DNA of 64,000 bases from Phyllobates terribilis. Lineage: Eukaryota. Position 1 is the stretch's first letter, and each line of letters begins with the position of its first letter. A program made the translations under genes and the position numbers. The notes under the pieces are model-generated. The model saw only the letters and a program-made list of their open reading frames with translations, was not told the origin of the DNA and searched no databases. The DNA is taken from assembly GCF_046119375.1 (NCBI RefSeq), contig NW_027362771.1, forward strand, positions 546,654,001-546,718,000. The letters are read 5' to 3'. This document shows positions 12,239-49,371 of this stretch, in pieces.

Positions 12239-12365
12239 GTTCCAATCAGGTTTGATGATGTGGCGGTGTACTTTTCGGCAGAGGAGTGGGAGAGCTTGGG
12301 AATGGGGGAAAAGCTGATGTACATGGATGTCATGCTGGAGAATTACTACACCCTTTTTTCTCTTG
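12239..12365 (+). CDS. KRAB-A box exon
   Basis: 127-nt exon VPIRFDDVAVYFSAEEWESLGMGEKLMYMDVMLENYYTLFSL with the DV and MLE motifs intact. Acceptor TCTTAG|, donor G|GTAAGA. Confidence 0.95.
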
Positions 12366-12789
12366 GTAAGACTCTATGGTCAAAATGAGAACTTTTATGG
12401 CTTTTATGGACACTTAACCATCTGCTTTCCTCTTCACACATTTCAAGCCTTGTCGGGAGTCTGAGATCTGTTTGGGACAGGTGACACTGATCTGATAACT
12501 GGAGATATGGAGGTAGTTGCTAAAATTTTATACAAAAGCCCATGAAGGAGAAACTCAAGATCATCCTTTTCATCCCTGGAGACCCTATATTATACCTCGC
12601 CTTCTGCTACCTACAGCTGCAATTAAAATTATTCAAGCCCAGTTGCCCAATTACAACTCTGGCTTAGTTGCAAAATTCACAAACTTTCTGCTGCTTGTCC
12701 TTGTTTCCTTGGTTAATTGAAATGTAAATAACCCAACTAATATAACAAGTGGTTTCTCCAAATTCTGCACAAAATGCCACTTTTACTGA

Positions 12790-16089: not shown

Positions 16090-18775
16090 TGTTAGAACCC
16101 TCCTGTTAGTTTTTTCTATTTTGCTGGTCACATGAATTTTTGCCTATTTAATCCAGCTCCGCCCCCCTGGCCTTGCTGGACTTCAGTGTTACATTTACTC
16201 TTAAGCTAGCCCTGTGCCTTGTACCTTACTCTGTAGTTTTTTGGGCTACATTATCTCCAGCGAGGGCTTTGAGATGGACCCGGTGAAGGTTCAGGTGGTT
16301 CAGGAATGGCCTAGGCCTATTGGTTTGAAACCAATACAGAGATTTTTGGGTTTCGCCAATTATTACAGAAAATTCATTAAGAATTTTTCTATAATTGTTA
16401 AGCCGCTGACTGATCTTACCAGGAAAGGTGCGAATACGGTCCAGTGGACTACTGAGGCCATTGAAGCTTTTGTGTATCTCAAGGAGAGGTTCAGTTCTGC
16501 CCCCATCCTTATGCAGCCTGTTGAGACCAAGCCTTTTTTGGTCGAGGTTGATGCTTCTTCGGTGGGGGTCGGTGCTGTTTTGTCTCAGGAAAACAAGGAT
16601 GGAGTACATCCCTGTGCTTTTTTTTTCAAAAAAAATTTCTGAGACCGAACTTAATTACGATGTCGGTAATCGGGAATTGCTGGCGATTAAACTCGCATTT
16701 GAACATTGGCGTCATCTCTTGGAAGGTGCTAAATTTCCCATTCAGGTTTTTACTGATCATAAGAATCTGATCTATCTTGATGCTGCCAAGCGCTTGAATG
16801 CCTGTCAAGCTAGGTGGGCACTTTTTTTTCCGCGGTTTAATTTTTCTGTTACTTACATTCCGGGTACCAAGAATGTAAAAGCTGATGCTTTATCTCGCAG
16901 TTTTTCTCCCATGGTTGGTACCGAGGAGGAGGAGAGCATTTTACAGGAAGGTGTTGTGATAGCAGCATTGGACTCCGTTTTGGAAGATGGGATTCTGAAA
17001 GCCCAGGAGGATGCCCCATCTAACACTCCCATGGGAGGTTGTTTGTGCCTAGGAACTTTAGGAGAGATTTGTTTGTGGAGTGTCATGACTCTCGGTTGGC
17101 AGGTCATCCAGGAATTTCGGAGACTAAGAAACTTGTAGGTCGCAGTTTTTGGTGCCCTGGGTGGCAGAAGGAAGTCATTAAGTGGGTGCGTCAATGTACT
17201 GTGTATGCTAGATCTAAGTCTTCACATGCTCCTGCTGCAGGGTTGCTTTGCCCTCTGGAGGTTCCTAGTGCTCCTTGGACGCATCTTGCTATGGATTTTA
17301 TTACTGACCTTCCTGCCTCTGAAGGTTTCACTGTTATCTGGGTGGTCGTGGACCGTTTTAGCAAGATGTGTCACTTGGTTCCCTTCATCAAACTGCACTG
17401 CGCCAAGACACTCGCTAAGGCTTTTGTTAAAGAAATTGTCAGGCTCCATGGCGTTCCTACCGACATTGTTTCCGATAGGGGACCTAATTTCGTGGCTCGT
17501 TTTTGGCGTGCCTTTTGTGACAGGTTGGGAGTCCATTTGTCATTTTCATCTGGTTATCATCCTGAGTCTAATGGACAGACAGAAAGAAAGAACCAGGATG
17601 TTGAACAGTTTTTGCGTTGTTTTGTGGCTGACAATCAAGAGGGATGGTCTGAGTTTCTGCCACTGGCTGAATTTGCTCTTAACAACCATACATCCTCTTC
17701 TGCTGGGTGTTCTCCTTTTTTTTGTTGTACTGGGAGACATCCGTCGTTTGGGTTATTCTCCAAATTGGTATCGGCTGTGCCTGAGGAGGAGAATTTTTCC
17801 GGTGATTTGGAGAGAGTTTGGACTGATGTACGTCGTAACCTTCAAGAGGCTAACAAAAAATCCAAGAGGTACTTTGCCAGGAAACGTCAAGAGGTTTTGT
17901 TTACTGTTGGTGACATGGTTTGGTTGTCCTCTAGGAATCTGCGGTTGAGGATTCCTTCTAAGAAATTGGTCCCGAAGTTTGTGGGTCCGTTTAAGGTGCT
18001 TCAGGTAGTTAACCAATCTGCTGTTAGGTTGGAGGTTCCTACCTCCTGGAAGATTAATCCGGTGTTTCATGTTTCCTTATTGAAAAAAGCTGATGTTTCT
18101 GATAGGGACGCCACTGTCTCTGTTCCTCCGGTGGAGGGAGACGGTGAATTTGAAATTTCTCGCATTCTTAATTCTAGATGGCTTAGAGGGAGATTACAGT
18201 ATCTCGTCGCTTGGAAAGGTTTCGGTCCCGAGGATAACTCCTGGGTAAGGGCGGATGATGTCTCTGCTCCTAGACTTGTTGGAGCGTTTCACAGGAGGTT
18301 TCCTGATAGACCTGGGCCTGGAGGATCCGGAGGATCCTCATAGAAGAGGGGGTACTGTTAGAACCCTCCTGTTAGTTTTTTCTATTTTGCTGGTCACATG
18401 ACTTTTTGCCTATTTAATCCAGCTCCGCCCTCCTGGCCTTGCTGGACTTCAGTGTTACATTTACTCTTAAGCTAGCCAGGTGCCTTGTACCTTACTCTGT
18501 AGTTTGCTTGGTCTCTTGACCACTAGTACTTCTGTTTGTTTGTTTGTCTTTGCTCTGCTACGATTTCCGCTAGGAGGTGTCCAACTATATCCCAGTCCTT
18601 AGTTCTTGTAGGGACCCCTTCCTTATATCTATAGGTCTGCGTTCAGACTAGCTGAGGACTTAGGCGGGTCTGTCCACAAGGAACAGGTCCCCCGCTGCAT
18701 CGTAGGGAATCAGCTTAGTCCTATTGTAGGGACAGTTTTCCTATCTTTCCTTAGTGTTTGTAGCAGTTCATAACA
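16090..18775 (+). mobile_element. pol: Internally deleted Ty3/Gypsy chromovirus (truncated 5' LTR fused to pol; complete 3' LTR 18356-18775)
   Basis: 5-bp TSD TTCTG on both sides. The first ~148 bp match the 3' LTR start, then jump to FLGYIIS (late RT). RNase H, HHCC/DDE integrase and chromodomain follow with frameshifts. PPT GAAGAGGGGGTAC. Confidence 0.92.
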
Positions 18776-25527: not shown

Positions 25528-25719
25528 ATGTGCAGCCCATCAGGGTGAAAGAGGAGCCGGAAACTGAAGTGTCCACTGCATATGGGACATCGGAGAGTTC
25601 TGTGGGCAGAAAATCGGGACGTCTGTTACATGCGCAAATGTGCAATAGAGTTGAGCAGCCGGCCTGTCACTCAGAAGCCCCTATAGGGCAAGATCTGGTA
25701 GATCAAAGTTTCTATAAAG
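25528..25719 (+). CDS. Linker exon, repeat module 1
   Basis: 192-nt phase 1-1 exon (D)VQPIRVKEEPETEVS...QDLVDQSFYK. TGTTGCAG| and AAG|GTAATA. Confidence 0.85.
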
Positions 25720-26179
25720 GTAATATGTTTTTATTTTCATTTCATTCTTCATTCATTGTACATATTTCACACTAAATATGTATAAATTACAAGAAATATA
25801 CGCATTATGCATCACCAACAACCCCAACCCTCCTTCTCGGTAGAAATATATATAATTTATGAGTTTGGTGTCCTACAAACCTCTTGTCCCAAGAATACAC
25901 ATTCCAATCCGGTTGATCCATATATCTGTACATCTGGAGAAGCTTTCCTCATTTAATTTTCATTGTTGTGTCTTATGACATTAATGACTTATCCTCAGGA
26001 TTGGTGGGGGTCTGATTCTTTGCACTCCCCACAGATCAGCTGCTATTAGCTTCAGTATTGGCGCCATTGAAGATAATAACAGCTGATCAAAGGGGGTGGT
26101 TAGTGTTGGACCCCCACCGATCCTGAAGATGAGTCATCAATATCATTGTAGTGGAACCCCCACCCTCCTTTAACCCTTG

Positions 26180-27139: not shown

Positions 27140-27343
27140 ATATGCAATCATTCATAGTAAAAGAAGAACCTGAGTATTATTCAGAGACCGATGTGTCCAA
27201 GAGATATTTGCTGGTGGAAAGTCCTGTGTGCCGCCAACAGAAGCTTTTGGTACGATCACAAAACTGCAATGGACTTGAGAAGCTGCTCTATCATCCAGAA
27301 GACTCTACAAGTCAAGAACTGGTAGACCAAAGTTTTTATAATA
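27140..27343 (+). CDS. Linker exon, repeat module 2
   Basis: 204-nt phase 1-1 exon (D)MQSFIVKEEPEYYSETDVS...QELVDQSFYN. TGTTGCAG| and ATA|GTAAGA. Confidence 0.85.
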
Positions 27344-28773
27344 GTAAGAAAGCAATTTTTTTATTCAATTAATGTGAAAAATATAAGACTCCTACTCGTC
27401 ATACAAGTCATCCCATCACCCCAGCCCTCACCACTACCATAAAAGTACCATGGAGATAGGTGCACTCATACATGGTCACTTTTCCAACTCCTCTTCTCTT
27501 TATCAGGGTGCTATAATGGGGTCAGGACAAAATACTGCGTGATTGCGAGCCAATATATAATCTTGAAAATTACAGAATTTACCTCCCCAAAGCTCAAAGG
27601 ATCCTGATTTTAAGTATTTAATAATCAACATTACTTTCTAGTTTGTATCCCGGAAGATGAGGAATGAATCTGCAGTCTGTCTCTGAGAAGACCTGTCAGC
27701 TCTCCCATGTCTTGTTTTCTTAGACCTCTGCCTTGTGCCAATCCTCTGTTTCTCCTACAAGGAATGTATGAATAAATTGACAACCAGGTGTCAGCAATTG
27801 GGGTCAGGTGTTCCTACACAGTCCGACACTGTCCAATCAGTGCTATTACTATCAGACCTTGTAGGGGAATGGTAACACCCAGTTGTCGTACAGGAATACC
27901 AGAGGAACGGCACGATGCAGAATTAAATGACAAGATGCTCCAGGATTGTCGTTCTATGGGGAATACAGGTATTCTGGAAAACAGAAGATGTCAGGACAGC
28001 TGTTGGGTCTAATTACATGTTTTTTCCCATGTGAGGGTATATATGTCCCCCTAACCTTACTTTTCTTAGTTGCTGTTGATTTTATGCTCCTCCATTCTAG
28101 AAAGACAGTGCACTTTATGCATACAATTCCCATTCCTACAACTCCACCTTGGATGGTGCGTCGTTCCAGCTCGTCTATATCAGAATCCCACTCTGACCGT
28201 ATAGACTTCTACCCATCTTGGTGTACATACAATAAGGTTGTGTTCACACTGAGTATTTTCAGGAGTTTTTGGAATGGAAACTATTCAGAATCCTCCCCAA
28301 AAATTGCTTCAAAAAACACTTCCAAATCCTTTCTATAGGAATTCCTTGTGGCTGTTTATATGAGGAGTCTTTTAAACTTCTCTCTTTTTTTTTTAAACCT
28401 GAAGATGTTTTGGAAAACGCCTGTGGTAAGCAGGTGTATGGTAATTCTTTTGGAGCGCTGTCCAATTAAAAGGCGTCAAAAAAACTTTTTAATATATAAA
28501 AAAAAAAACCTCTTCAACAGCCTCGGGAAAAGAAAAATTGCTCCAAAACCTCCCCAAATACAGGCGTTTCTTGAAGCATTTCTGCTTGAAAACTCATGGT
28601 TTCTAAACTCCTTTAGAAAAGGAGCCGCCTGAAGAATGAGCATGTTAAAATCTATATTATAAGGCTGGATGCGTGTCTCTGTCTGAAGCCTCATTAGACT
28701 GAGCATGCTCAGTGTGGCGCCATGACGACAATATGTCCAGGACAAGAGAGAGAGGAAGAGAGAGACACATTCC

Positions 28774-31700
28774 TGAGTACACCCCTATATTATCAGTACA
28801 TTATACATACAGCGCTCAGCATAAGTGAGTACACCCCTCTGTATCCTCAGTACGTTACACATACAGCGCTCAGCATAAGTGAGTACACCCCCCTGTATTC
28901 TCAGTACGTTACACATACAGCACTCAGCGTAAGTGAGTACACCCCCCTGTATTCTCAGTACATTATACATACAGCGCTCAGCATAAGTGAGTACACCCCC
29001 CTGTATTCTCAGTACGTTATACATACAGCGCTCAGCATAAGTAAGTACACCCCCCTGTATTCTAAGTACGTTATACATACAGTGCTCAGCATAAGTGAGT
29101 ACACCCCCCTGTATTCTCAGTACGTTATACATACAGCGCTCAGCATAAGTGAGTACACCCCCCTGTATCCTCAGTACGTTATACATTCAGCGCTCAGCAA
29201 AAGTGAGTACACCCCCTGTATCCTCAGTACGTTATACATACAGCGCTCAGCATAAGTGAGTACACCCCCCTGTATTCTCAGTACGTTATACATACAGCGC
29301 TCAGCATAAGTGAGTACACCCCCCTGTATTCTCAGTACGTTATACATACAGCGCTCAGCATAAGTGAGTACACCCCCCTGTATTCTCAGTACGTTATACA
29401 TACAGCGCTCAGCATAAGTGAGTACACCCCCTGTATCCTCAGTACGTTATACATACAGCGCTCAGCATAAGTGAGTACACCCCCCTGTATTCTCAGTACG
29501 TTATACATACAGCGCTCAGCATAAGTGAGTACACCCCCCTGTATTCTCAGTACGTTATACATACAGCGCTCAGCATAAGTAAGTACACCCCCTGTATCCT
29601 CAGTACGTTATACATACAGCGCTCAGCATAAGTGAGTACACCCCCCTGTATCCTCAGTACGTTATACATACAGCGCTCAGCATAAGTGAGTACACCCCCC
29701 TGTATTCTCAGTACGTTATACATACAGCGCTCAGCATAAGTGAGTACACCCCCCTGTATTCTCAGTACGTTATACATACAGCGCTCAGCATAAGTGAGTA
29801 CACCCCCCTGGATCCTCAGTACGTTATACATACAGCGCTCAGAATAAGTGAGTACACCCCCCTGTATTCTCAGTACGTTATACATACAGCGCTCAGCATA
29901 AGTGAGTACACCCCCCTGGATCCTCAGCACTTTATACATACAGCGCTCAGCATAAGTGAGTACACCCCCCTGGATCCTCAGTACGTTATACATACAGCGC
30001 TCAGCAAAATTGAGTACACCCCCTGTATCCTCAGTACGTTATACATACAGTGCTCAGCAAAAGTGAGTACACCCCTATGTATTCTTAGTACGTTATACAT
30101 ACAGTGCTCAGCGTAGGTCAGTACACCCCCCTGTATTCTCAGTACGTTATACATACAGCACTCAGCATAAGTGAGTACACCCCCCTGTATTCTCAGTACG
30201 TTATACATACAGTGCTCAGCGTGCGTACACCCCCCTGTATTCTCAGTACGTTATACATACAGCGCTCAGCATAAGTGAGTACACCCCCCTGTATCCTCAG
30301 TACGTTATACATACAGCGCTCAGCGTAAGTGAGTACACCCCCCTGTATTCTCAGTACGTTATACATACAGCGCTCAGCGTAAGTGAGTACACCCCCCTGT
30401 ATTCTCAGTACGTTATACACACAGCGCTCAGCATAAGTGAGTACACCCCCCTGTATTCTCAGTACGTTATACATACAGCGCTCAGCATAAGTGAGTACAC
30501 CCCCTGTATCCTCAGTACGTTATACATACAGCGCTCAGCAAAAGTGAGTACACCCCCCTGTATTCTCAGTACGTTATACATACAGCGCTCAGCATAAGTG
30601 AGTACACCCTCTGTATTCTCAGTACGTTATACATACAGCTCTCAGCGTAAGTGAGTACACCCCCCCTGTATTCTCAGTACGTTATACATACAGCGCTCAG
30701 CATAAGTGAGTACACCCCCCTGTACTCTCAGTACGTTATACATACAGCGCTCAGCATAAGTGAGTACACCCTCTGTATTCTCAGTACGTTATACATGCAG
30801 CGGTCAGCGTAAGTGAGTACACCCCCCAGTATTCTCAGTACGTTATACATACAGTGCTCAGCATAAGTGAGTACACCCCCCTGTATTCTCAGTACGTTAT
30901 ACATACAGCGCTCAGCGTAAGTTAGTACACCCCCCTGTATTCTCAGTACGTTATACACAGAGCACTCAGCATAAGTGAGTACACCCCCCTGTATTCTCAG
31001 TACATTATACATACAGCGCTCAGCATAAGTGAGTACACCCCCCTGTATTCTCAGTACATTACACATACAGCGCTCAGCAAAAGTGAGTACACCCCTCTGT
31101 ATTCTCAGTACTTATACATACAGTGCTCAGCGTAAGTGAGTACACCCCCCTGTATTCTCACTATTATATATACAGCGCTCAGCGTAAGTGAGTACACCCC
31201 CCTGTATTCTCAGTACGTTATACATAGTGCTCAGCAAAAGTGAGTACACCCTCCTGTATTCTCAGTACGTTATACATACAGCGCTCAGCGTAAGTGAGTA
31301 CACCCCCTGTATTCTCAGTACATTATCCATACAGCGCTCAGTGTAAGTGAGTACACCCTCTGTATTCTCAGTACATTATACATACAGTGCTCAGCGTAAG
31401 TGAGTACACCCCCTGTATTGTCAGTGCATTACACATATAGCGCTCAGCATAAGTGAGTACACCCCCCCGTATTCTCAGTACGTTATACATACAGCGCTCA
31501 GCGTAAGTGAGTACACCCCCCTGTATTCTCAGTACGTTACACATACAGCGCTCAGCATAAGTGAGTACACCCCCTGTATTCTCAGTACATTATACATTCA
31601 GCGCTCAGCATAAGTGAGTACACCCCCTGTATTCTCAGTACGTTATACATACAACGCTCAGCGTAAGTGAGTACACCCCCTTGTATTCTCAGTACGTTAT

Positions 31701-34700
31701 ACATACAGTGCTCAGCAAAAGTGAGTACACCCTCCTGTATTCTCAGTACGTTATACATACAGTGCTCAGCGTAAGTGAGTACACCCCTATGTATTCTCAG
31801 TACGTTATACATACAGCGCTCAGCGTAAGTGAGTACACCCCCTGTATTCTCAGTACATTATACATACAGCGCTCAGCGTAAGTGAGTACACCCTCTGTAT
31901 TCTCAGTACGTTATACATAGAGTGCTCAGCGTGAGTACACCCCTCTGTATTCTCAGTACGTTATACATACAGCGCTCAGCGTAAGTGAGTACACCCCCTG
32001 TATTCTCAGTACATTATACATACAGCGCTCAGCGTAAGTGAGTACACCCTCTGTATTCTCAGTACGTTATACATACAGCGCTCAGCATAAGTGAGTACAC
32101 CCCCCTGTATTCTCAGTACGTTATACATACAGCGCTCAGCATAAGTGAGTACACCCCCCTGGATCCTCAGTACGTTATACATACAGCGCTCAGAATAAGT
32201 GAGTACACCCCCCTGTATTCTCAGTACGTTATACATACAGCGCTCAGCATAAGTGAGTACACCCCCCTGGATCCTCAGCACTTTATACATACAGCGCTCA
32301 GCATAAGTGAGTACACCCCCCTGGATCCTCAGTACGTTATACATACAGCGCTCAGCAAAATTGAGTACACCCCCTGTATCCTCAGTACGTTATACATACA
32401 GTGCTCAGCAAAAGTGAGTACACCCCTATGTATTCTTAGTACGTTATACATACAGCGCTCAGCGTAAGTGAGTACACCCTCTGTATTCTCACTGTTGTAT
32501 ATAAAGCGCTCAGCGTAAGTGAGTACACCCCCCGTATTCTCAGTACGTTATACATAGTGCTCAGCAAAAGTGAGTACACCCTCCTGTATTCTCAGTACGT
32601 TATACATACAGCGCTCAGCGTAAGTGAGTACACCCTCTGTATTCTCAGTACATTATACATACAGTGCTCAGCATAAGTGAGTACACCCCCCGTATTCTCA
32701 GTACGTTATACATACAGCGCTCAGCGTAAGTGAGTACACCCCCCGTATTCTCAGTACGTTATACATTCAGCGCTCAGCATAAGTGAGTACACCCCCTGTA
32801 TTCTCAGTACTTTATACATACAGCGCTCAGCATAAGTGAGTACACCCCCTGTATTCTCAGTACTTTATGCATACAGCGCTCAGCATAAGTGAGTACACCC
32901 CCTGTATTCTCAGTAAGTTATACACACAGCGCTCAGCATAAGTGAGTACACCCCCCTGTATCCTCAGTACGTTATACATACAGCGCTCAGCAAAAGTGAG
33001 TACACCCCCTGTATTCTCAGTACGTTATACATACAGCGCTCAGCTTAAGTGAGTACACCCCCCTGTATTCTCAGTACGTTATACATACAGCGCTCAGCGT
33101 AAGTGAGTACACCCCCCTGTATTCTCAGTACATTATACATACAGCGCTCAGCATAAGTGAGTGCACCCTCTGTATTCTCAGTACGTTATACATACAGCAC
33201 TCAGCATAAGTGAGTACACCCCCCTGTATTCTCAGTACATTATACATACAGCGCTCAGCGTAAGTGAGTACACCCCCCTGTATTCTCAGTATATTATACA
33301 TACAGCGCTCAGCATAAGTGAGTACACCCCCTGTATTCTCAGTACGTTATACACACAGCGCTCAGCATAAGTGAGTACACCCCCCTGTATTCTCAGCACG
33401 TAATACACACAGCGCTCAGCATAAGTGAGTACACCCCCCTGTATTCTTAGTACATTATACATACAGCGCTCAGCAAAAGTGAGTACACCCCCTGTATTCT
33501 CAGTACTTTATACATACAGCGCTCAGCATAAGTGAGTACACCCCCCTGTATTCTCAGTACGTTATACATACAGCGCTCAGCATAAGTGAGTACACCCTCT
33601 GTATTCTCAGTACGTTATACATACAGCGCTCAGCGTGAGTACACCCCCCTGTATTCTCAGTACGTTATACATACAGTGCTCAGCATAAGTGAGTACACCC
33701 CCCTGTATTCTCAGTACGTTATACATACAGCGCTCAGCGTAAGTGAGTACACCCCCCCTGTATTCTCAGTACGTTATACACACAGCACTCAGCATAAGTG
33801 AGTACACCCCCCTGTATTCTCAGTACGTTATACATACAGCGCTCAGCATAAGTGAGTATACCCCCCTGTATTCTCAGTACGTTATACACACAGCGCTCAG
33901 CATAAGTGAGTACACCCCCCTGTATTCTCAGTACGTTATACATACAGCGCTCAGCATAAGTGAGTACACCCCCCTGTATTCTCAGTACGTTATACATACA
34001 GTGCTCAGCATAAGTGAGTACACCCTCCTGTATTCTCAGTACGTTATACATACAGCGCTCAGCAAAAGTGAGTGCAGCTCCTGTATTCTCAGTATGTTAT
34101 ACATACAGCGCTCAGCGTAAATGAGTACACCCCCCTGTATTCTAAGGACATTATATATACAGCTCTCAGCATCAGTGAGTACACCCCCTGTATTCTCAGT
34201 ACGTTATACATACAGCGCTCATCATAAGTGAGTACACCCCCTGTATTCTCAGTACCTTATACATACAGCGCTCAGCGTAAGTGAGTACACCCCCCTGTAT
34301 TCTCAGTACGTTATACATACAGCGCTCAGCAAAAGTGAGTGCACCTCCTGTATCCTCAGTACGTTATACATACAGCGCTCAGCGTAAGTGAGTACACCTC
34401 CCTGTATTCTCAGTACGTTATACATACAGTGCTCAGCATAAGTGAGTACACCCCCCTGTATTCTCAGTACGTTACACACACAGCGCTCAGCATAAGTGAG
34501 TACACCCCCCTGTATTCTCAGTACGTTATACATACAGCGCTCAGCATAAGTGAGTACACCCCCCTGTATTCTCAGTACGTTATACATACAGTGCTCAGCA
34601 TAAGTGAGTACACCCTCCTGTATTCTCAGTACGTTATACATACAGCGCTCAGCAAAAGTGAGTGCAGCTCCTGTATTCTCAGTATGTTATACATACAGCG

Positions 34701-37700
34701 CTCAGCGTAAGTGAGTACACCCCCCTGTATTCTAAGGACATTATATATACAGCTCTCAGCATAAGTGAGTACACCCTCTGTATTCTCAGTACGTTATACA
34801 TACAGCGCTCATCATAAGTGAGTACACCCCCCTGTATTCTCAGTACGTTATTCATACAGCGCTCAGCGTAAGTGAGTACACCCCCCTGTATTCTCAGTAC
34901 GTTATACATACAGCGCTCAGCAAAAGTGAGTGCACCTCCTGTATCCTCAGTACGTTATACATACAGCGCTCAGCAAAAGTGAGTACACCCCCCTGTATCC
35001 TAAGTACGTTATACATACAGCGCTCAGCAAAAGTGAGAACACCCCCTGTATTCTCAGTACGTTATACATACAGCGCTCAGTGTAAGTGAGTACACCCCCC
35101 TGTATTCTCACTGTTATATATACAGCATTCAGCGTAAGTGAGTACACCCCCCTGTATTCTCAGTACGTTATACATATTGCTCAGCAAAAGTGAGTACAAC
35201 CTCCTGTATTCTCAGTACGTTATACATACTGCACTCAGCATAAGTGAGTACACCCCCCTGTATTCTCAGTACATTATACATACAGCGCTCAGCATAAGTG
35301 AGTACATCCTCCTGTATTCTCAGTACGTTATACACAGAGCACTCAGCATAAGTGAGTACACCCCCCTGTATTCTCAGTACATTATACATACAGCGCTCAG
35401 CAAAAGTGAGTACACCCCCTGTATCCTCAGTACATTATACATACAGTGCTCAGCAAAAGCGAGTACACCCCTCTGTATTCTCACTGTTATACATACAGCG
35501 CTCAGCGTAAGTGAGTACACCCCCTGTATTCTCAGTACATTATACATACAGCGCTCAGCGTAAGTGAGTACACCCTCTGTATTCTCAGTACATTATACAT
35601 ACAGTGCTCAGCGTAAGTGAGTACACCCCCTGTATTGTCAGTGCATTACACATATAGCGCTCAGCATAAGTGAGTACACCCCCCCGTATTCTCAGTACGT
35701 TATACATACAGCGCTCAGCGTAAGTGAGTACACCCCCCTGTATTCTCAGTACGTTATACATACAGTGCTCAGCATAAGTGAGTACACCCCCCTGTATTCT
35801 CAGTACGTTATACACACAGCGCTCAGCATAAGTGAGTACACCCCCCTGTATTCTCAGTACGTTATACATACAGCGCTCAGCATAAGTGAGTACACCCCCC
35901 TGTATTCTCAGTACGTTATACATACAGTGCTCAGCATAAGTGAGTACACCCTCCTGTATTCTCAGTACGTTATACATACAGCGCTCAGCAAAAGTGAGTG
36001 CAGCTCCTGTATTCTCAGTATGTTATACATACAGCGCTCAGCGTAAGTGAGTACACCCCCCTGTATTCTAAGGACATTATATATACAGCTCTCAGCATAA
36101 GTGAGTACACCCCCCTGTGTTCTCACTGTTATATATACAGCGTTCAGCGTAAGTGAGTACACCCCCCTGTATTCTCAGTACGTTACACATACAGCGCTGA
36201 GCATAAGTGAGTACACCCCCTTGTATTCTCAGTACGTTATATATACAGCGCTTAGCGCAAGTGAGTACACCCCCCTGTATTCTCAGTACGTTATACATAC
36301 AGCGCTCAGCATAAGTGAGTACACCCTCTGTATTCTCAGTACGTTATACATACAGCGCTCATCATAAGTGAGTACACCCCCCTGTATTCTCAGTACGTTA
36401 TACATACAGCGCTCAGCGTAAGTGAGTACACCCCCCTGTATTCTCAGTACGTTATACATACAGCGCTCAGCAAAAGTGAGTACACCTCCTGTATCCTCAG
36501 TACGTTATACATACAGCGCTCAGCAAAAGTGAGTACACCCCCCTGTATCCTAAGTACGTTATACATACAGCGCTCAGCAAAAGTGAGAACACCCCCTGTA
36601 TTCTCAGTACGTTATACATACAGCGCTCAGTGTAAGTGAGTACACCCCCCTGTATTCTCACTGTTATATATACAGCGTTCAGCGTAAGTGAGTACACCCC
36701 CCTGTATTCTCAGTACGTTATACATATTGCTCAGCAAAAGTGAGTACAACCTCCTGTATTCTCAGTACGTTATACATACTGCACTCAGCATAAGTGAGTA
36801 CACCCCCCTGTATTCTCAGTACATTATACATACAGCGCTCAGAATAAGTGAGTACATCCTCCTGTATTCTCAGTACGTTATACACAGAGCACTCAGCATA
36901 AGTGAGTACACCCCCCTGTATTCTCAGTACATTATACATACAGCGCTCAGCAAAAGTGAGTACACCCCCTGTATTCTCAGTACATTATACATACAGTGCT
37001 CAGCAAAAGCGAGTACACCCCTCTGTATTCTCACTGTTATATATACAGCGCTCAGCGTAAGTGAGTACACCCTCCTGTATTCTCAGTACGTTATACATAC
37101 AGCGCTCAGCGTAAGTGAGTACACCCCCTGTATTCTCAGTACATTATACATACAGCGCTCAGCGTAAGTGAGTACACCCTCTGTATTCTCAGTACATTAT
37201 ACATACAGTGCTCAGCGTAAGTGAGTACACCCCCTGTATTGTCAGTGCATTACACATATAGCGCTCAGAATAAGTGAGTACACCCCCCCGTATTCTCAGT
37301 ACGTTATACATACAGCGCTCAGCATAAGTGAGTACACCCCCTGTATTCTCAGTACATTATACATTCAGCGCACAGCATAAGTGAGTACACCCCCTGTATT
37401 CTCAGTACTTTATACATACAGCGCTCAGCATAAGTGAGTACACCCCCCTGTGTTCTCACTGTTATATATACAGCGTTCAGCGTAAGTGAGTACACCCCCC
37501 TGTATTCTCAGTACGTTACACATACAGCGCTGAGCATAAGTGAGTACACCCCCTTGTATTCTCAGTACGTTATATATACAGCGCTTAGCGCAAGTGAGTA
37601 CACCCCCCTGTATTCTCAGTACGTTATACATACAGCGCTCAGCATAAGTGAGTACACACCCTGTATTCTCAGTACGTTATACATAAAACGCTCAGCGTAA

Positions 37701-40627
37701 GTGAGTACACCCCCCTGTATTCTCACTGTTATATATACAGCGTTCCGTGTAAGTGAGTACACCCCCCTGTATTCTCAGTATATTATATATACAATGTTCA
37801 GCATAAGTGAGTACACCCCCTGCATTCTCAGTACGTTATACATACAACGCTCAGCGTGAGTACACCCCCTTGTATTCTCAGTACGTTATACATACAGTGC
37901 TCAGCAAAAGTGAGTACACCCTCCTGTATTCTCAGTACGTTATACATACAGTGCTCAGCGTAAGTGAGTACACCCCTCTGTATTCTCAGTACGTTATACA
38001 TACAGCGCTCAGCGTAAGTGAGTACACCCCCTGTATTCTCAGTACATTATACATACAGCGCTCAGCGTAAGTGAGTACACCCTCTGTATTCTCAGTACGT
38101 TATACATAGAGTGCTCAGCGTGAGTACACCCCTCTGTATTCTCAGTACGTTATACATACAGCGCTCAGCGTAAGTGAGTACACCCCCTGTATTCTCAGTA
38201 CATTATACATACAGCGCTCAGCAAAAGTGAATACACCCCTCTGTATTCTCAGTACTTATACATAGAGTGCTCAGCGTGAGTACACCCCTCTGTATTCTCA
38301 GTACGTTATACATAGAGTGCTCAGCGTAAGTGAGTACACCCCTCTGTATTCTCAGTACGTTATACATACAGTGCTCAGCAAAAGTGAGTACACCCCTCTG
38401 TATTCTCAGTACTTATACATACAGCGCTCAGCGTAAGTGAGTACACCCCCTGTATTCTCACTGTTGTATATACAGCGCTCAGCGTAAGTGAGTACACCCC
38501 CCTGTATTCTCAGTACGTTATACATAGTGCTCAGCAAAAGTGAGTACACCCTCCTGTATTCTCAGTACGTTATACATACAGCGCTCAGCGTAAGTGAGTA
38601 CACCCCCTGTATTCTCAGTACATTATACATACAGCGCTCAGCGTAAGTGAGTACACCCTCTGTATTCTCAGTACATTATACATACAGTGCTCAGCATAAG
38701 TGAGTACACCCTCTGTATTCTCAGTACGTTATACATACAGCGCTCAGCGTGAGTACACCCTCTGTATTCTCAGTACGTTATACATACAGCGCTCAGCGTA
38801 AGTGAGTACACCCCCATGTATTCTCACTGTTATATATACAGCGTTCAACGTAAGTGAGTACACCCCCCTGTATTCTCAGTACGTTATACATAGTGCTCAG
38901 CAAAAGTGAGTACACCCTCCTGTATTCTCAGTACGTTATACATACAGCGCTCAGCATAAGTGAGTAGACCCCCTTGTATCCTTAGTACGTTATACATACA
39001 GCGCTCAGCAAAAGTGAGTACACCCTCTGTATCCTCAGTACATTATACATACAGTGCTCAGCAAAATTGAGTACACCCCTCTGTATTCTCAGTACGTTAT
39101 ACATACAGCGCTCAGCAAAAGTGAGTACACCCCCTGTATCCTCAGTACATTATACATACAGTGCTCAGCAAAAGTGAGTACACCCCTCTGTATTCTCAGT
39201 ACTTATACATACAGCGCTCAGCGTAAGTGAGTACACCCCCTGTTTTCTCACTGTTGTATATACAGCGCTCAGCGTAAGTGAGTACACCCCCCTGTATTCT
39301 CAGTACGTTATACATAGTGCTCAGCAAAAGTGAGTACACCCTCCTGTATTCTCAGTACATTATACATACAGCGCTCAGCGTAAGTGAGTACACCCTCTGT
39401 ATTCTCAGTACATTATACATACAGTGCTCAGCATAAGTGAGTACACCCCCCCGTATTCTCAGTACGTTATACATACAGCGCTCAGCGTAAGTGAGTACAC
39501 CCCCCTGTATTCTCAGTACGTTACACATACAGCGCTCAGCATAAGTGAGTACACCCCCCTGTATTCTCACTGTTATATATACAGCGTTCCGCGTGAGTAC
39601 ATCCCCCTGTATTCTCAGTATATTATATATACAGCGTTCAGCATAAGTGAGTACACCCCCTGCATTCTCAGTACGTTATACATACAACGCTCAGCGTAAG
39701 TGAGTACACCCCCTTGTATTCTCAGTACGTTATACATACAGTGCTCAGCAAAAGTGAGTACACCCTTCTGTATTCTCAGTACGTTATACATACAGTGCTC
39801 AGCGTAAGTGAGTACACCCCCTTGTATTCTCAGTACGTTATACATACAGTGCTCAGCAAAAGTGAGTACACCCTCCTGTATTCTCAGTACGTTATACATA
39901 CAGTGCTCAGCGTAAGTGAGTACACCCCTCTGTATTCTCAGTACGTTATACATACAGCGCTCAGCGTAAGTGAGTACACCCCCTGTATTCTCAGTACATT
40001 ATACATACAGCGCTCAGCGTAAGTGAGTACACCCTCTGTATTCTCAGTACGTTATAGAGTGCTCAGCGTAAGTGAGTACACCCTCTGTATTCTCAGTACG
40101 TTATACATACAGCGCTCAGCGTGAGTACACCCTCTGTATTCTCAGTACGTTATACATACAGCGCTCAGCGTAAGTGAGTACACACCCATGTATTCTCACT
40201 GTTATATATACAGTGTTCAGCGTAAGTGAGTACACCCCCCTGTATTCTCAGTACGTTATACATACAGCGCTCAGCAAAAGTGAGTACACCCCCTGTATCC
40301 TCAGTACATTATACATACAGCGCTCAGCGTAAGTGAGTACACCCTCTGTATTCTCAGTACATTATACATAGTGCTCAGCATAAGTGAGTACACCCCCCTG
40401 TATTCTCAGTACGTTACACATACAGCGCTGAGCATAAGTGAGTACACCCCCTTGTATTCTCACTGTTATATATACAGCGCTTAGCGCAAGTGAGTACACC
40501 CCCCTGTATTCTCAGTACATTATACATACAGTGCTCAGCGTAAGTGAGTAAACCCCCCTGTATTCTCACTGTTATATATACAGCTTTTAGCGTAAGTGAG
40601 TACACCCCGCCCTGTATTCTAAGGACA
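28774..40627. repeat. 54-bp satellite array, ~220 copies, with higher-order duplications
   Basis: Consensus TGAGTACACCCCCCTGTATTCTCAGTACGTTATACATACAGCGCTCAGCATAAG (53/54-bp variants via the C run). Copy number is estimated from 11.85 kb divided by unit length. Confidence 0.97.
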
Positions 40628-41060
40628 TCTATAATATAAGGCGGGATGCGTGTCTCTGTCTGAAGCCTCGATAGACTGCGCATGTGTGACGCGCAGTCTG
40701 GCTCCTGACAGAAGCAGGCATCCAGCCGTTACAGGTAAGAGGAGTATATGGCGCCGGAGATCGTGGTATGTGTAGACACTGAACGCATACCGCGATCTCC
40801 GGCACCATACTTACATACTTACCTGACCGGGAGGAGCGTTGTCGCGGCGCCTCTCTTCGCTGGAGACCGGGGGCGGAGTGAAGACGTTGGACTGGCGCGT
40901 GCGCATTGTGCTATCCGGCGCCATTTTACTGAAGACACATTTACAGTGTGTCTTCAGCAAAATGGCGCCGGACAGCACGGTGCTCCAGCGCTGCACTCCT
41001 CCCCCGGCCTCCGGCAGAAGAGGACGCAGCAGCGCTGGAGTACAGAGAAGAAAGGTGAGT
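40628..41060 (+). promoter_or_regulatory. CpG-rich promoter-like cassette in the inner Helitron
   Basis: NRF1-like TGCGCATGTG (40677-40686), a GC box, inverted YY1-type AAAATGGCG sites in a 32-bp-arm palindrome (40908-40978), and donors CAG|GTAAGA (40734) and AAG|GTGAGT (41054). Motif-level evidence only. Confidence 0.4.
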
Positions 41061-41100
41061 ATAACTGTTTATTTTTTTTGTATGTGTGTACAGTGTGAAA

Positions 41101-42598
41101 GGGATGAGGGGACCACACATAACAGGATTGTGGGGTGAGGGGACCATGCATATATCAGGATTGGGGGTGTGAGGGGTACCACACATACCAGGATTGGGGG
41201 GTGAGGGGTACCACACATACCAGGATTGGGGGTGAGGGGTACCACACATACCAGGATTGGGGGGTGAGGGGTACCACACATACCAGGATTGGGGGTGAAG
41301 GGTACCACACATACCAGGATTGGGGGTGAGGGGTACCACACATACCAGGATTGGGAGTGAGGGGTACCACGCATACCAGGATAGGGGGGTGAGGGGTGCC
41401 ACGCATACCAGGATTGGGGAGTGAGGGGTGCCACGCATACCAGGATTGGGGGGTGAGGGGTACCACACATACCAGGATTGAGGGTGAGGGGTACCACGCA
41501 TACCAGGATAGGGGGGTGAGGGGTACCACGCATACCAGGATAGGGGGGTGGGGGGTGAGGGGTGCCACGCATACCAGGATTGGGGGGTGAGGGGTACCGC
41601 GCATACCGGGATTGGGGGGTGAGGGGTACCGCGCATACCAGGATTGGGGAGTGAGGGGTACCACGCATACCAGGATTGGGGGGTGAGGGGGGTACCACGC
41701 ATACCAGGATTGGGGGGTGAGGGGGGTACCACGCATACCAGGATTGGGGGGTGAGGGGTACCACGCATACCAGGATTGGGGGTGAGGGGTACCACGCATA
41801 CCAGGATTGGGGGGTGAGGGGTACCACGCATACCAGGATTGGGGGTGAGGGGTACCACGCATACCAGGATTGGGCGGTGAGGGGTACCACGCATACCAGG
41901 GGTTGGGCGGTGAGGGGTACCACGCATACCAGGGGTTGGGCGGTGAGGGGTACCACGCATACCAGGGGTTGGGCGGTGAGGGGTACCACGCATACCAGGA
42001 TTGGGGGGTGAGGGGTGCCACGCATGCCACGATTGGGGAGTATGGGGTACCACGCATGCCAGGATTGGGGAGTGAGGGGTACCACGCATGCCAGGATTGG
42101 GGGGTGAGGGGTGCCACACATACCGGGATTGGGGGGTGAGGGGTGCCACGCATACCGGGATTGGGGGGTGAGGGGTGCCACGCATACCGGGATTGGGGGG
42201 TGGGGGGTGCCACGCATACCGGGATTGGGGGGTGAGGGGTGCCACGCATACCGGGATTGGGGATGAGGGGTGCCACGCATACCGGGATTGGGGATGAGGG
42301 GTGCCACGCATACCGGGATTGGGGATGAGGGGTGCCACGCATACCGGGATTGGGGATGAGGGGTGCCACGCATACCGGGATTGGGGATGAGGGGTGCCAC
42401 GCATACCGGGATTGGGGATGAGGGGTGCCACGCATACGGGGATTGGGGGTGAGGGGTGCCACGCATACCGGGATTGGGAGTGAGGGATAGGGTGCCATGC
42501 ATACCAGGATGAGGGATACCATACACACCAGGATAGGGATGAGGGGTGCCACGCATACCAGGATTGGGGGTGAGGGGGGCAGCACATACCAGCATGGG
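41101..42598. repeat. G-rich ~31-bp minisatellite, ~48 copies
   Basis: Unit GGTGAGGGGTACCACGCATACCAGGATTGGGG with positionally clustered variants. Confidence 0.95.
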
Positions 42599-42822
42599 AG
42601 ACCATATACCAATAAAAATGCTCGCCCCCCCCGGGCGTAGAACGGGTTCAATAGCTAGTAAGTGATATAAGATGGAACATTTTCACAGCGATGCCGTTTT
42701 AACATTACTTTGCATCATGTTCATTTTATGGGGCGCTTTTTCTGGCGGATTGCAGGCAGATAGTGTGACCATGTGCACACAGCCTAAGCGTCACATATAA
42801 ATCCTTTGTATTTCTCTTTCAG

Positions 42823-44063
42823 CAGCACAATCCATCACAGTCAAAGAGGAGCTAGAGTATTTTTTTGAGACTGATGTGTTCCCCAGATATTGGACAACGG
42901 AAAGTTCTGTGTGCGTCAAACCGGATCTTATGTTACCAGCGCAAATGTGCAATGGAGTTGAGAAGATGGTCTGTCATTCTGGAGACTCTACAAGACAAGA
43001 CCTGGTAGGTCAAGGTTTCAATAATGGGAATAAATCTTTAGTTCAGGCAATTCGTGACCAGTATGAAGGAACGACGTGGGTTGGGTCAAGTGTCACCAAG
43101 TCTGAAGTGATGGCTGAGCGCAAATCCCATCTCACGGAGAGATCTCACAAATGCACGGACTGCGGAAAATGCTTCAACAGTACTTCACACCTATTAAGAC
43201 CGAGGAGAATCCATGCAGGTGAGAGGCTTTATTTATGTGGCAAATGTGGAAAAAGTTTCATTGATAGCGCCTAGCTTGTCATACATGGAAGGACGCACAC
43301 CGGTGAGAAGCCATATGCCTGTAGCAAATGTGACAAGAGGTTCATATGCAAGTTGCACCTTGTGAGACACCAGAGATCTCACACGGGTGAGCGGCCGTAC
43401 GTGTGCAGCAAATGTGGTAAAAGGTTTGCTCAGAGCTCCAATCTTCTCACTCACTTGAGAACCCACACGGGGGAGAAGCCGTATTCTTGTTCTTATTGTG
43501 AAAAATGTTTTATCCGGAGGTCCCATCTTGTGCGTCATCAGCGGATTCACACAGGACAGGGGCCCTATGCTTGCAGTGAATGTGAGAAAAGCTTCACAGA
43601 AAGTTCTGGTCTGCTGAAACATCTGAGAACACACTCAGGGGAAAAGCCTTATGCCTGCAGCCAGTGCCAAAAATCATTTATGGACAAGTCCGCCTTGGCC
43701 AACCATCAGAGAACTCATACAGGGGAGCGGCCATATCCTTGTAGAGACTGCGGGAAAACGTTCTCTCACAGCTCCGCTCTGGTGAAGCATGTCCGTATTC
43801 ACACTGGTGAAAAGCCGTATGCATGCAGAAAATGTGGGAAAAGTTTTTCTCAGACCTCGGCCCTTGTGAATCATGAGACAACTCACACTGGAGAAAAGCC
43901 ATTTTCATGTTCTGACTGTGGGAATTGTTTTACACAAGCGTCCTCCCTTGTAAAACACCAGCGGACTCACACAGGAGTGAGGCCATACACCTGCGGAGAG
44001 TGTGGGAAGAGTTTTACATACAGCTCCGTGCTCGTCAAACATGAGAGGACGCACAAAAAATAA
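42823..44063 (+). CDS. Terminal exon: repeat module 3 plus 11 C2H2 units, with in-frame TAG at 43272-43274
   Basis: Tandem acceptor TTTCAG|CAG|. ORFs 42876-43274 and 43353-44063 share one frame. TGEKPY-type linkers, 9 intact fingers after the stop, natural stop TAA at 44061-44063. Confidence 0.92.
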
Positions 44064-44174: not shown

Positions 44175-44968
44175 TATCTTTAGTTTAGAAAATCGTATTC
44201 ATTTTGTCAGGAGGTAATAACTACAATCATCACCATCTTGTTACACTGACAGAAAACAAAATAATAGGACAGGAGCCTCTGAGCATGTGCAGTAGGACGC
44301 TCTGCTGCTGTGTCCTGGAAGGAACTTATACTATTAGCTCCAGGACACAGCAGCAGAACTGCACATGCTCCCAAACACATCTTGTGAAAGGGTTATTCCC
44401 ACACTATCAATCATGTAGGTTTTCTCTGGCCAGTTTGCACATGCTCAGTAGACGCTTGCTATTCTTCTATAATGGGTATCCTCCTCTTAAAGGGGTTGTC
44501 CGGGCATGGGAATTTGATTACTTATCTAAAGTATAGGCAATTAATAGCAGATCAGTGGGGGTCCAACTACTTTTGCCCCCACTGATCAGTTATTTTTTTT
44601 TGTTCCAGCAGCCGGGTTTAAACACAATGAATGGAGATGCTGAGCACAGCTTTGTTCAAACTGTAGCTGCCGCTGCTGGGTACTGCAGGACAGCTCCTGT
44701 TCTTTTGTATAAAACCAGTGCTGCAGTGGCCGCTACACTTTGAACAAAGCTGCGCACAGCAGCTATTTTTTGTGTTGTTGCGGAAACCCCTCTGTAGGGA
44801 GAGCTTTGGGGGAGACGCTAGGGGTCTCCACACTTTTGGCAGTCTTGACCAAATTAGGGCTACAATATACACACGTGTCTGTGTACAGAGCCTATCTGCT
44901 GGGCCTTAAAACAGGGATCCTTTTTATTATCAAGTTAGAAAAAGGAAGTGAATAACGGTAGCAACATA

Positions 44969-46604
<1,636 letters not shown>

Positions 46605-47111
46605 TATATGGGCATAAGATCATTTGAGCAGAAAGTTTATAGCTTATAAATTCAACTCTCCGGTAACCTACACTTATGAAACCAGACAATGTCTAAAACA
46701 GTTTCCCAAATTAGCAAGACTTACATACTGTCTGGTTACTTTTAAAATAAAATAAAACTTAATGCTAAGCAAGAAGTGAAAACCAAAGTTATTCTTCTGA
46801 GATATAAATTGTCTTAAATGATAATAAAAGTAAGCTAATTAAGAACAACATCTACAAGACATGAGAAAGACATGAGCCATCGTGAGGAACAGTATTGACG
46901 GACGCGTGTGTGATGGAAGTGCTGGGCCGTCTCCTGTTAGCCATGGAAATTATTATGTTTGGTTAATGGCCAGATAGTTTAGGATTTATTTTTTTAATGT
47001 TGATGTGATTTACTTTACCTCTATGAGAAGAAAATAAAGTTGATTAATTCCAGTATGAATAAAAACCTTTACTTTTGTATTGAAGTTTTTATTGAGTTTG
47101 AGTCTAAACAC

Positions 47112-47480: not shown

Positions 47481-49371
47481 ACTGGCTCCAGGAAGTCTTC
47501 GATCAGTGCTTTGAACAGAGCAAGCTCTTACCTAGCTACTATGGAATAATTGAATTAACCTCTTCCTTCACCCATATAGGGGTGGGGGGGGACTGCCTAG
47601 CCTTGGAGTGATTACAGAACCTGCAGGCGGTGGTACACCTCATTTTCACATGTCAGATTATAAAAGTTGCATCCCCCAGAGCAGAGGGAAATGAAGTCTA
47701 TGCCCCCAGGTCTCCTGGATCAATTAAAGGCTATAATTATACTTTCATAGGCTGTTTATAAAAATGATCAAAAAAAGTAAATAACCCCATAAATTCCAGA
47801 GCCAAAGACCTGTTGAGCGGGCGTATTAGATATTTTAGTGTTTCTTTTATTTTAATACTGCCATTTGCCTCATACATCACTGTTTTTGGTATAAATTATA
47901 TTACCACATGTCAAACAATTTACCAGTTGGTGCAGTAGTTCCTAAGAAAACCATCAGAGTCCGCATTCATGATCTGCAGGTTTTTGAGTCTGTGTATTTG
48001 AATAATTAATTGAAAGGGGAGTGTTCAAAATAATAGCAATGTGGAGGTCAATTAGCGAGGTAAGTCATTCTGTGAAGAAACAGGTGTGTATCAGGTGGCC
48101 CTTATTTAAGGGTGAAGCTAGCACATGTTGTGTATGCATTTCTCCTTGAAAGCCTGAGGAATATGGGTTGTTCAAGACATTGTTCAGAAGAACAGCGTAC
48201 TTTGATTAAAAAGTTGGAGAGGGTAAAACTTATAATGAAGTGCAGACTGTAACGGGTCTGGGAGGTGGAACCTCTGAGCAACGATACAAAGGGGCAGTCC
48301 TTGTAAGGAAGCGGGTGGCTCCCAGGGTAGGTGGGCAGGTAGTCACGGCAAGTGACGGGGACAGTCTCTGGGTAGAAGGGCAGGGGGTCACGGCAAGTGA
48401 CGGGGACAGTCTCTGGGTAGAAGGGCAGGAGGTCACGGCAAGTGACGGGGACAGTCTCTGGGTAGAAGGGCAGGAGGTCACGGAAAGTGACGGGAACAGT
48501 TTCTTGACAGGCGGGTGGTCACGGCAAGTGATGGCTAAGCCTCCAGGTAGGCTAGCAGGCAGGTAGCAGGCGCACGCTCCCAGGTGAGCGGGTAAGAGTC
48601 TCTGGACAGGCAGGTGGTCACAGCACGTGACGGCAGAGCCTCCAGGTAGGCTAGCAGGCAGGTAGCAGGCGGACGCTCCCAGGTGAGCGGGTAAGAGTCT
48701 CTGGACAGGCAGGTGGTCACAGCACGTAACGGCAGAGCCTCCAGGTAGGCTAGCAGGCAGATAGCAGATGGACGCTCCCAGGTGAGCGGGTAAGAGTCTC
48801 TGGACAGGCAGGTGGTCACAGCACGTGACGACAGAGCCTCCAGGTAGGCTAGCAGGCAGGTAGCAGATGAGCGCTCCCAGGTGAGCGGGTAAGAGTCTCT
48901 GGACAGGCAGGTGGTCACAGCACGTGACGGCAGAGCCTCCAGGTAGGCTAGCAGGCAGGTAGCAGATGAGCGCTCCCAGGTGAGCGGGCAATGAGATCCA
49001 TAGACAGACTGGCAGGGCTGGTAGGCAGACTGTCGGACCGCAGGAATGCAAGTAGATAGACAAGTATCAGGCAGGTATCAAGCAGGAATCTGGCAGGTAA
49101 CTGGTAACGGGACCTGAGGGCTGAAGCTGAGTGATAGACTATGCAACAACATTGCTCGGGCACCTCCATTTTGGAGGAGGTGCCTTATATATGGTGAGGT
49201 CCTCCGGCCATTGGCCGGGGACTCCTTAGGACGGCGCGCGCGGCCCCTTTAAGAGAGGGGGAGCACGCTCGCACCCTAAGCACAGTGGCTGGGAAGCAGC
49301 GCACGCTGCCAGCAGAGCGGGAGGAAGACGCCGGGCACGGAGCAGAGATGTGAGGGGAACAGCGTCCCTGC

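What the first reader, a model, noticed from the sequence alone, without database searches (positions are those of the whole stretch)
28651..42658. A 14-kb compound Helitron-like block (two 5' ends, one 3' end) acts as a satellite carrier in the last intron of a KRAB-ZNF gene
Seen in sequence: a ~56-bp motif starting A|TCTATA(T/A)TATAAGGC.GGATGCGTGTCTCTGTCTGAAGCCTC occurs directly before (28651) and directly after (40628) the 12-kb array. A single hairpin + CTAG|T end lies at 42658 and there is no TSD. Established: TC...CTRR ends, a subterminal hairpin and A-T insertion define Helitrons, and Helitrons in other animals are known to seed tandem repeats. Inference: an upstream copy lacking its own 3' terminator was joined to a second copy (terminator bypass, or nested insertion with deletion), so satellite, promoter-like cassette and minisatellite may have moved as one unit.
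Basis: partly seen in the sequence, partly recalled or inferred. Interest (0 to 1): 0.75.

Follow-up and report, generated by a model that had tools for sequence, protein, structure and literature searches.

The report
Chimeric Helitron carrying a satellite array
A 14-kb block in a poison-frog-type zinc-finger gene intron is a gene-less rolling-circle transposon (Helitron) with two start ends and one stop end enclosing a 12-kb satellite; this is a clear example of a structure already known from maize, bats and oysters, not a new kind of element.

Summary
The described features are all present. A 54-bp satellite (222 units, 28774-40627) is bracketed by two copies of a Helitron-type 5' end (28651, 40628). 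Their homology starts exactly at A|TC and runs about 80 bp, not 56. The second head opens a 2.0-kb gene-less element (two long CpG-rich palindromes, a 32-bp minisatellite) ending CTAG|T at 42658, with no target duplication and no inverted ends.

Public contigs show that everything left of about 42660 belongs to very abundant repeats, present in three species labels, while depth falls about 1000-fold in the flank. One contig has head 2 without satellite upstream.

The array stops at an A|T of its own unit, which is what insertion of the head-2 element into satellite predicts. The outer junctions look like one Helitron insertion. I therefore favour a chimeric Helitron that starts at head 1 and ends at the nested element's terminator. 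Movement as a unit is not shown, because no other copy or empty site could be fetched. Much of the 12 kb grew in place, since interior blocks are 99-100% identical.

Multi-terminus Helitrons and Helitron-borne satellites are already published. The scan has also noted Helitron-plus-satellite structures elsewhere in this genome; whether they are the same family is unchecked.

The parts
28650..28650 (+). Host A of the A|T target, left junction
   Evidence: Sequence GTTAAAA|TCTATATT; the left flank has no other match in the window.
28651..28730 (+). Head 1: Helitron-type 5' end (LTS-A), starting TC, with a TA-rich start and the subterminal palindrome ACTGAGCA/TGCTCAGT
   Evidence: 57 nt at 91% to 40628. 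Homology extends to about 80 nt. 4 of the 5 differences are transversions.
28731..28773 (+). Purine-rich linker between head 1 and the first satellite unit
   Evidence: no significant similarity to the satellite unit or to the cassette.
28774..40627 (+). 54-bp satellite: 222 units plus a 31-nt partial unit ending ..GGACA
   Evidence: TRF; unit parsing. Internal blocks are 99-100% identical and the right edge is 89-92% to the array consensus. Summed contig depth is 2-5 million in run X1, and the satellite is present in the runs labelled organisms B and C.
40628..40713 (+). Head 2: 5' end (LTS-B) of the complete 2.0-kb element, with hairpin AGACTGCGC..GCGCAGTCT
   Evidence: The fold has z -3.2. 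One X9 contig carries 255 unrelated nt before 40625.
40714..41060 (+). CpG-rich cassette made of two long palindromes (about 40731-40833 and 40853-41022) with four ATGGCGCC motifs
   Evidence: DNA fold -122 kcal/mol, z -13.8. GC 0.59, CpG o/e 0.99. Motif positions. No Pfam, Rfam or tRNA match.
41101..42577 (+). 32-bp G-rich minisatellite, 46 units
   Evidence: TRF. Highly repeated in all four runs.
42578..42658 (+). 3' end (RTS): AATAAA, a weak hairpin CGCCC-CCCCC-GGGCG (42623-42637), and the terminal CTAG (42655-42658)
   Evidence: Depth falls from 3.9 million (42531-42627) to 406 (42725-42821) in X1.
42659..42659 (+). Host T of the A|T target, right junction
   Evidence: CTAG|TAAGTGA; no TSD.
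12245..12370 (+). KRAB-box exon of the host gene (context)
   Evidence: Pfam KRAB, E 6.9e-18.
42822..44063 (+). Zinc-finger exon of the host gene, with an in-frame TAG at 43272-43274 (context)
   Evidence: ORFs 42876-43274 and 43353-44063 are in one frame. Pfam zf-C2H2 in 8 stretches.

Best explanation
The block is a chimeric, gene-less Helitron.

Proposed history:
1. A complete 2.0-kb non-autonomous Helitron of a very abundant frog family (40628-42658: 5' end, palindromic CpG-rich cassette, 32-bp minisatellite, 3' end CTAG) inserted, somewhere in the genome, into an array of the abundant 54-bp satellite at one of the unit's A|T sites.
2. Upstream of that array lay the 5' end of a related Helitron subfamily (head 1).
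3. A rolling-circle transposition started at head 1 and unwound through the satellite. It stopped at the first usable terminator, the 3' end of the nested element.
4. So head 1, some satellite and the whole nested element landed together at one A|T in the intron.
5. The satellite then expanded and turned over in place to its present 12 kb.

What is shown: the anatomy; the ends; the abundance and the 3' boundary of the family; the A|T position of the inner junction; the in-place growth of the array.

What is inferred: the order of events and the joint movement.
For: Ends:
- TC after A at both heads, with homology beginning exactly there although the upstream DNA is intron in one case and satellite in the other.
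- CTAG before T at 42658, no TSD, no TIR.

Family:
- In DNA run X1 the summed contig depth is 0.2-0.5 million over head 2 and the cassette, and 3.9 million in the tail bin. It is 406 in the flank bin 42725-42821 and about 40 over the exon.
- Runs labelled organisms B and C hold cassette and satellite contigs at about 90-95% identity.
- One contig has head 2 preceded by unrelated DNA ending in A.

Two subfamilies, not a fresh duplication:
- 4 of the 5 head differences are transversions, whereas 144 of 187 differences between this copy and the contigs of run X1 are transitions. My binomial estimate is p about 0.01.
- The subterminal palindrome differs by a two-sided C:G to A:T change plus a 7-nt indel.

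Nested insertion:
- The array ends ..GTACA| where the ACAT unit variant continues with T.
- Only about 4-5 of the 54 positions in a unit are A|T. That gives roughly 12:1 for a Helitron insertion over a random break (my estimate).

Growth in place:
- 29726 and 32077 are 100% identical; 34748 and 36298 are 99.4% identical over about 0.8 kb.
- The local element differs from the family majority at 17 or more of 473 cassette sites, mostly CpG transitions.

Precedent:
- The hairpin acts as terminator, the LTS is essential, and read-through or replacement of 3' ends next to other Helitrons is documented (PMC4778049).
- 17.6% of maize helA elements have multiple 5' termini, derived from nested Helitrons (PMC3288121).
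Against: - No second copy of the compound, no empty site and no orthologous locus was seen, so joint movement is inference.
- No RepHel gene is in the window, and no autonomous partner with these ends is known to me.
- The 3' hairpin is weak: a 5-bp stem, z -0.83.
- Contig depth is not a copy number, and the boundaries are resolved only to 97-nt bins plus one loose end.
- Only 40 of 284 difference sites were listed, so 'head 2 equals the consensus' rests on a truncated table.
Confidence: 0.55

Rival explanations
1. The compound was assembled in place by two insertions. The 2.0-kb element entered the intron first. Later an element with head 1 and satellite, lacking its own terminator and ending at a de novo 3' end inside the satellite, inserted exactly at the A|T formed by the host A and the T of the resident element's TC. 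The compound never moved.
For: [quoted passage not shown] Other notes of this scan report head-to-tail Helitron junctions in this genome (unchecked). The final structure would be identical to what is seen.
Against: - It needs a hit on one particular dinucleotide.
- The supposed de novo 3' end is GGACA, not CTRR-like.
- Its break falls at an A|T of the satellite unit, which a random truncation does only about 8% of the time (my estimate).
Confidence: 0.2
2. The two heads are an in-place duplication. The 2.0-kb element was there first, and the linker plus satellite was inserted or copied in behind its first 57-80 nt with duplication of that stretch (repair or template switching). On this reading head 1 is the original 5' end and no second Helitron is involved.
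For: The two copies are direct repeats bracketing the inserted block. Their 9% divergence is of the order of twice the local copy's divergence of at least 3.6% from its family.
Against: - 4 of the 5 differences are transversions, against 77% transitions in the differences between this copy and the contigs of run X1.
- The palindrome differs by a compensatory pair and a 7-nt indel.
- The right copy begins exactly at TC after an A of the satellite unit's A|T site. A duplication has no reason to respect that.
- The satellite is a genome-wide repeat, not local.
Confidence: 0.1
3. The termini are not Helitron ends. The 2-kb repeat belongs to another or an unclassified repeat class, and TC/CTAG/A|T is coincidence. 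The block would then be satellite plus dispersed repeat joined by ordinary rearrangement.
For: - The hairpin is not better than shuffles.
- There is no RepHel in the window.
- There are no hits in any sequence library available here.
- TC, CTAG, A and T are together only about 8 specified bases.
Against: - Homology of two independent copies starts exactly at A|TC.
- The depth of the family collapses around CTAG.
- There is no TSD and there are no TIRs.
- The TA-rich 5' start and the GC-stem-plus-CTAGT 3' end resemble published Helitron ends in frogs and maize.
Confidence: 0.1

Closest known systems
Maize Helitrons with multiple termini derived from nested Helitrons (PMC3288121)
   Same: They have two or more 5' ends with one functional 3' end. 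The published explanation is nesting followed by transposition from the outer 5' end. The pseudo 5' end is indistinguishable from a true one. The helB 3' end is a GC stem (GCGCCC..GGGCGC) before CTAGT.
   Different: Here the DNA between the two heads is a 12-kb satellite rather than gene fragments. The host is a frog. Recurrence of the compound was not shown.
Helibat/Helraiser 3'-end replacement and read-through; promoter-carrying HelibatN3 (PMC4778049)
   Same: The LTS is essential and the RTS hairpin acts as terminator. Novel ends arise when an element lies next to another Helitron. Insertion is A|T without TSD. A non-autonomous family can carry a CpG-rich captured promoter with a splice donor.
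   Different: No experiment was done here. The cassette's origin from a host promoter is unproven and its form is palindromic.
Helitron/Helentron-borne tandem repeats: oyster Helentron non-autonomous elements (PMC7492417), Xenopus Heli2Xen 166-bp minisatellites (PMC12001565), Drosophila DINE-TR1 (own knowledge)
   Same: Rolling-circle elements carry internal tandem repeats that can grow into satellite-like arrays and are spread with the element.
   Different: Those arrays are mostly short and belong to Helentron/Helitron2 types with other ends. Here a canonical TC/CTAG type encloses 222 units, and it is not shown that the satellite normally travels with these ends.

Membership tests
Canonical Helitron (Helitron1), non-autonomous | 5' terminus TC | tested here: met
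   Both heads start TCTATA, and homology between them begins exactly there.
Canonical Helitron (Helitron1), non-autonomous | 3' terminus CTRR | tested here: met
   CTAG at 42655-42658. Family depth collapses within the bins around it.
Canonical Helitron (Helitron1), non-autonomous | Insertion between A and T without target-site duplication | tested here: inconclusive
   The junctions read A|TC and CTAG|T with no TSD. One other copy also has A before TC. No empty site was available to prove it.
Canonical Helitron (Helitron1), non-autonomous | Hairpin about 10-20 nt upstream of the 3' end | tested here: inconclusive
   There is a 5-bp G:C stem at 42623-42637, 17 nt before CTAG. MFE -6.1 kcal/mol, z -0.83 against shuffles. 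The family majority differs at 42627.
Canonical Helitron (Helitron1), non-autonomous | No terminal inverted repeats | tested here: met
   Heads against the reverse-complemented tail give only 5-6 nt matches.
Canonical Helitron (Helitron1), non-autonomous | Multi-copy family with shared ends at different loci | tested here: met
   Over 100 distinct contigs cover each cassette site in X1. Depth is about 1000 times that of the flank bin (42725-42821) and about 10,000 times that of the exon. The family is present in the runs labelled organisms B and C. The boundaries are only coarsely resolved.
Canonical Helitron (Helitron1), non-autonomous | An autonomous RepHel partner sharing the termini | not testable with these tools
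   There is no RepHel in the window, and no whole-genome search is on hand.
Compound (multi-terminus) Helitron that transposes as a unit | The same inner junction found at two or more independent insertion sites | not testable with these tools
   Protein-word, metagenome and viral scans were blank.

The most novel reading that the evidence does not exclude
The abundant 54-bp satellite of these frogs is spread around the genome mainly by Helitrons. A 5' end lying upstream of satellite repeatedly borrows the terminator of Helitrons nested in the arrays. Each such chimera seeds a new array that then grows in place, including inside genes.
Probability: 0.15. Interest if true: 0.55.

Novelty: new member of a known kind. 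Interest (0 to 1): 0.3.

Why it matters
The locus shows, in one clean example, how a gigantic frog genome can enlarge an intron about 15-fold. A rolling-circle transposon delivers a seed of satellite, and the satellite then expands in place. If the same chimera recurs at other sites, it would link the spread of a major satellite to Helitron terminator borrowing in a vertebrate. That link has been described mainly in plants, insects and molluscs. As it stands, it is a well-documented but ordinary case.

Tried and rejected
Routes to other copies, all blank:
- Protein word searches with the cassette ORF and the linker-satellite ORF.
- Exact scans for the 26-nt head core in the metagenome and viral collections.

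Checks for a known RNA or SINE origin:
- Rfam found nothing over the whole window.
- No tRNA is found in 28000-43000.

Ideas rejected:
- The satellite unit derives from the head or linker. Alignment scores are at shuffle level.
- The linker is homologous to the cassette. The score of 24 compares with a shuffle mean of 22.
- The ends are TIRs.
- A cryptic 3' end for head 1 lies before 40628. There is only a CTAA 6 nt short of the junction and no hairpin.
- A paralogous empty site lies in the window. The flanks match nothing else; only the exon part has paralogs, at 25560 and 27145.

Not over-read:
- The many 'skips about 1,070' joints in the minisatellite. Short-read contigs collapse tandem arrays.

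Full report
**Observation.** Tandem Repeats Finder reports a 54-bp array at 28774-40620 (222 copies, 90% matches) and a 32-bp array at 41101-42577 (46 copies). Its 26-nt core is identical in both copies and none is expected in shuffles. BLAST gives 57 nt at 91%, E 1.6e-17.

A gapped alignment shows that the homology continues to about 80 nt, with a 7-nt indel inside a palindrome. Upstream of the two copies the DNA is unrelated: intron in one case, satellite in the other. Homology starts exactly at TC preceded by A.

Head 1 is separated from the first satellite unit by 66 unrelated nt, part of them purine-rich. Head 2 abuts the last, 31-nt partial unit..GGACA|TC. The block ends ..AATAGCTAG|T at 42658, and this tail is unique in the window. 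The flanks GTTAAAA| and |TAAGTGA share no duplication, and the heads are not inverted copies of the tail.

The 3' hairpin is weak. It is a 5-bp G:C stem at 42623-42637, and it is not better than shuffles (z -0.83). The window has no N.

**Context.** A KRAB box lies at 12245 (Pfam E 7e-18). A C2H2 finger exon runs from about 42822 to 44063 on the same strand, with one in-frame TAG. So 'intron of a KRAB-ZNF gene' is plausible, but no transcript model was verified. Earlier notes of the scan place this genome among poison frogs and list many Helitron families in it. I treat those notes as leads only.

**Is it a mobile family?** I laid the contigs of four public runs on 40300-43200.

| Region | Summed contig depth in the DNA run of the same species label (X1) |
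|---|---|
| Satellite | 2-5 million |
| Head 2 and cassette | 0.2-0.5 million |
| Last element bin (42531-42627) | 3.9 million |
| 42725-42821 | 406 |
| Zinc-finger exon | about 40 |

This is not a copy number. It does show that everything left of about 42660 is highly repeated, and that the repeat ends in the bins around CTAG.

- More than 100 distinct contigs cover each cassette site.
- The local copy differs from the majority at 17 or more of 473 cassette positions. Nearly all of these are T or A here where the family has C or G, and the one site I checked (40685) is a CpG. It is a moderately old copy.
- Two runs labelled as other species hold cassette and satellite contigs at about 90-95% identity.
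- One contig of X9 has head 2 preceded by 255 unrelated nt ending in A. The head-2 element therefore also exists without satellite upstream.

**The inner element.** Behind head 2 lie two long palindromes (fold -122 kcal/mol, z -13.8). They have GC 0.59 and CpG o/e 0.99 and carry four ATGGCGCC motifs. The minisatellite follows, then an AATAAA and the tail. There is no Pfam, Rfam or tRNA signal and no RepHel anywhere in the window. It is a non-autonomous element. 'Promoter-like' is compatible with the composition but untested.

**Two subfamilies, not a fresh duplication.** Four of the five differences between the heads are transversions, whereas 144 of 187 differences between this copy and the contigs of run X1 are transitions. 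My binomial estimate is p about 0.01. The subterminal palindrome is kept in both heads but differs by a two-sided C:G to A:T change and a 7-nt indel.

**The inner junction.** The array stops at ..GTACA| where the ACAT variant of the unit continues with T. That variant is found 33 times, against 138 for ACGT. Only 4-5 of the 54 positions of a unit are A|T. A break there is therefore about 12 times more likely under Helitron insertion into satellite than under a random truncation (my estimate). Yet no satellite follows the tail, and the outer junctions look like one clean A|T insertion.

The simplest history is the one published for maize elements with multiple termini (PMC3288121) and supported by Helraiser experiments (PMC4778049). 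In that history nesting comes first, then transposition from the outer 5' end to the first usable terminator. The same final structure would arise if a terminator-less head-1 element had inserted exactly beside the resident element. I rate that lower but cannot exclude it.

**Growth in place.** The array holds blocks that are 99-100% identical at lags of 1.3-2.4 kb (29726/32077; 34748/36298, about 0.8 kb). Its edges are older: the right end is 89-92% to the array consensus and the left part 96-98%. This is younger than the element itself appears to be. Much of the 12 kb therefore arose after insertion, and '14 kb moved as a unit' overstates what is needed.

**What could not be done.** No other copy, empty site or orthologous locus could be fetched. 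The scan's notes mention Helitron-plus-satellite structures on other pieces of this genome; I could not check whether they are the same family.

**Comparison and verdict.** Helitrons with several 5' ends (17.6% of maize helA), replacement of 3' ends next to other Helitrons, promoter-carrying non-autonomous Helitrons, and Helitron- or Helentron-borne tandem arrays are all published. This is a new member of a known kind: a good specimen in a vertebrate with a giant genome. Confidence in the chimeric-Helitron reading is 0.55. Interest is 0.3.

Noticed in passing
window 42659-42665: The 7 nt right after CTAG (TAAGTGA) equal the satellite unit's letters after another of its A|T sites (GCA|TAAGTGA). 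By chance this is about 0.1-1%. There is no further similarity, and it is unexplained.
   Followed up: partly
window 42659-42821: The right flank is itself moderately repeated in run X1: 37 contigs and depth about 2100 at 42710, and 406 in the next bin, against about 40 in the exon. It could be an older repeat or paralogous ZNF introns. Such copies could serve as empty sites.
   Followed up: no
window 42531-42627: The last part of the minisatellite plus the pre-tail has about 10 times the depth of the cassette in all four runs. The 3' part may be shared with other families.
   Followed up: no
window 25560-25736, 27145-27351, 42828-43034: Three copies, 66-75% identical, of the exon-like stretch that opens the zinc-finger exon (..VKEEPE..). 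This suggests duplicated exons or neighbouring gene fragments.
   Followed up: partly
window 43272-43274: An in-frame TAG splits the zinc-finger exon into ORFs 42876-43274 and 43353-44063. The exon is nevertheless covered at higher depth than the intron in run X9, which may be RNA.
   Followed up: partly
window 45306-46385: An uninterrupted 359-aa Tc1/Sleeping-Beauty-type transposase ORF (HTH_SB, HTH_Tnp_Tc3_2, DDE_3) lies between inverted repeats at 44966-45104 and 46469-46607. Further Tc1 fragments lie at 10881-11447 and 59600-60616.
   Followed up: partly
window 16214-18343 (+) and 48230-53958 (-): Ty3/gypsy-type retroelements are present (gag, RT, RNase H, integrase, chromodomain). The second is flanked by matching 45- and 99-bp tandem repeats at 48248-49088 and 53413-54055.
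   Followed up: partly
window 56579-57512: Two adjoining 35-bp tandem arrays (CTGCTTGTCCACCGCGCCTGCGGTTTCGCT.. and CCTGCCAGTA..).
   Followed up: no
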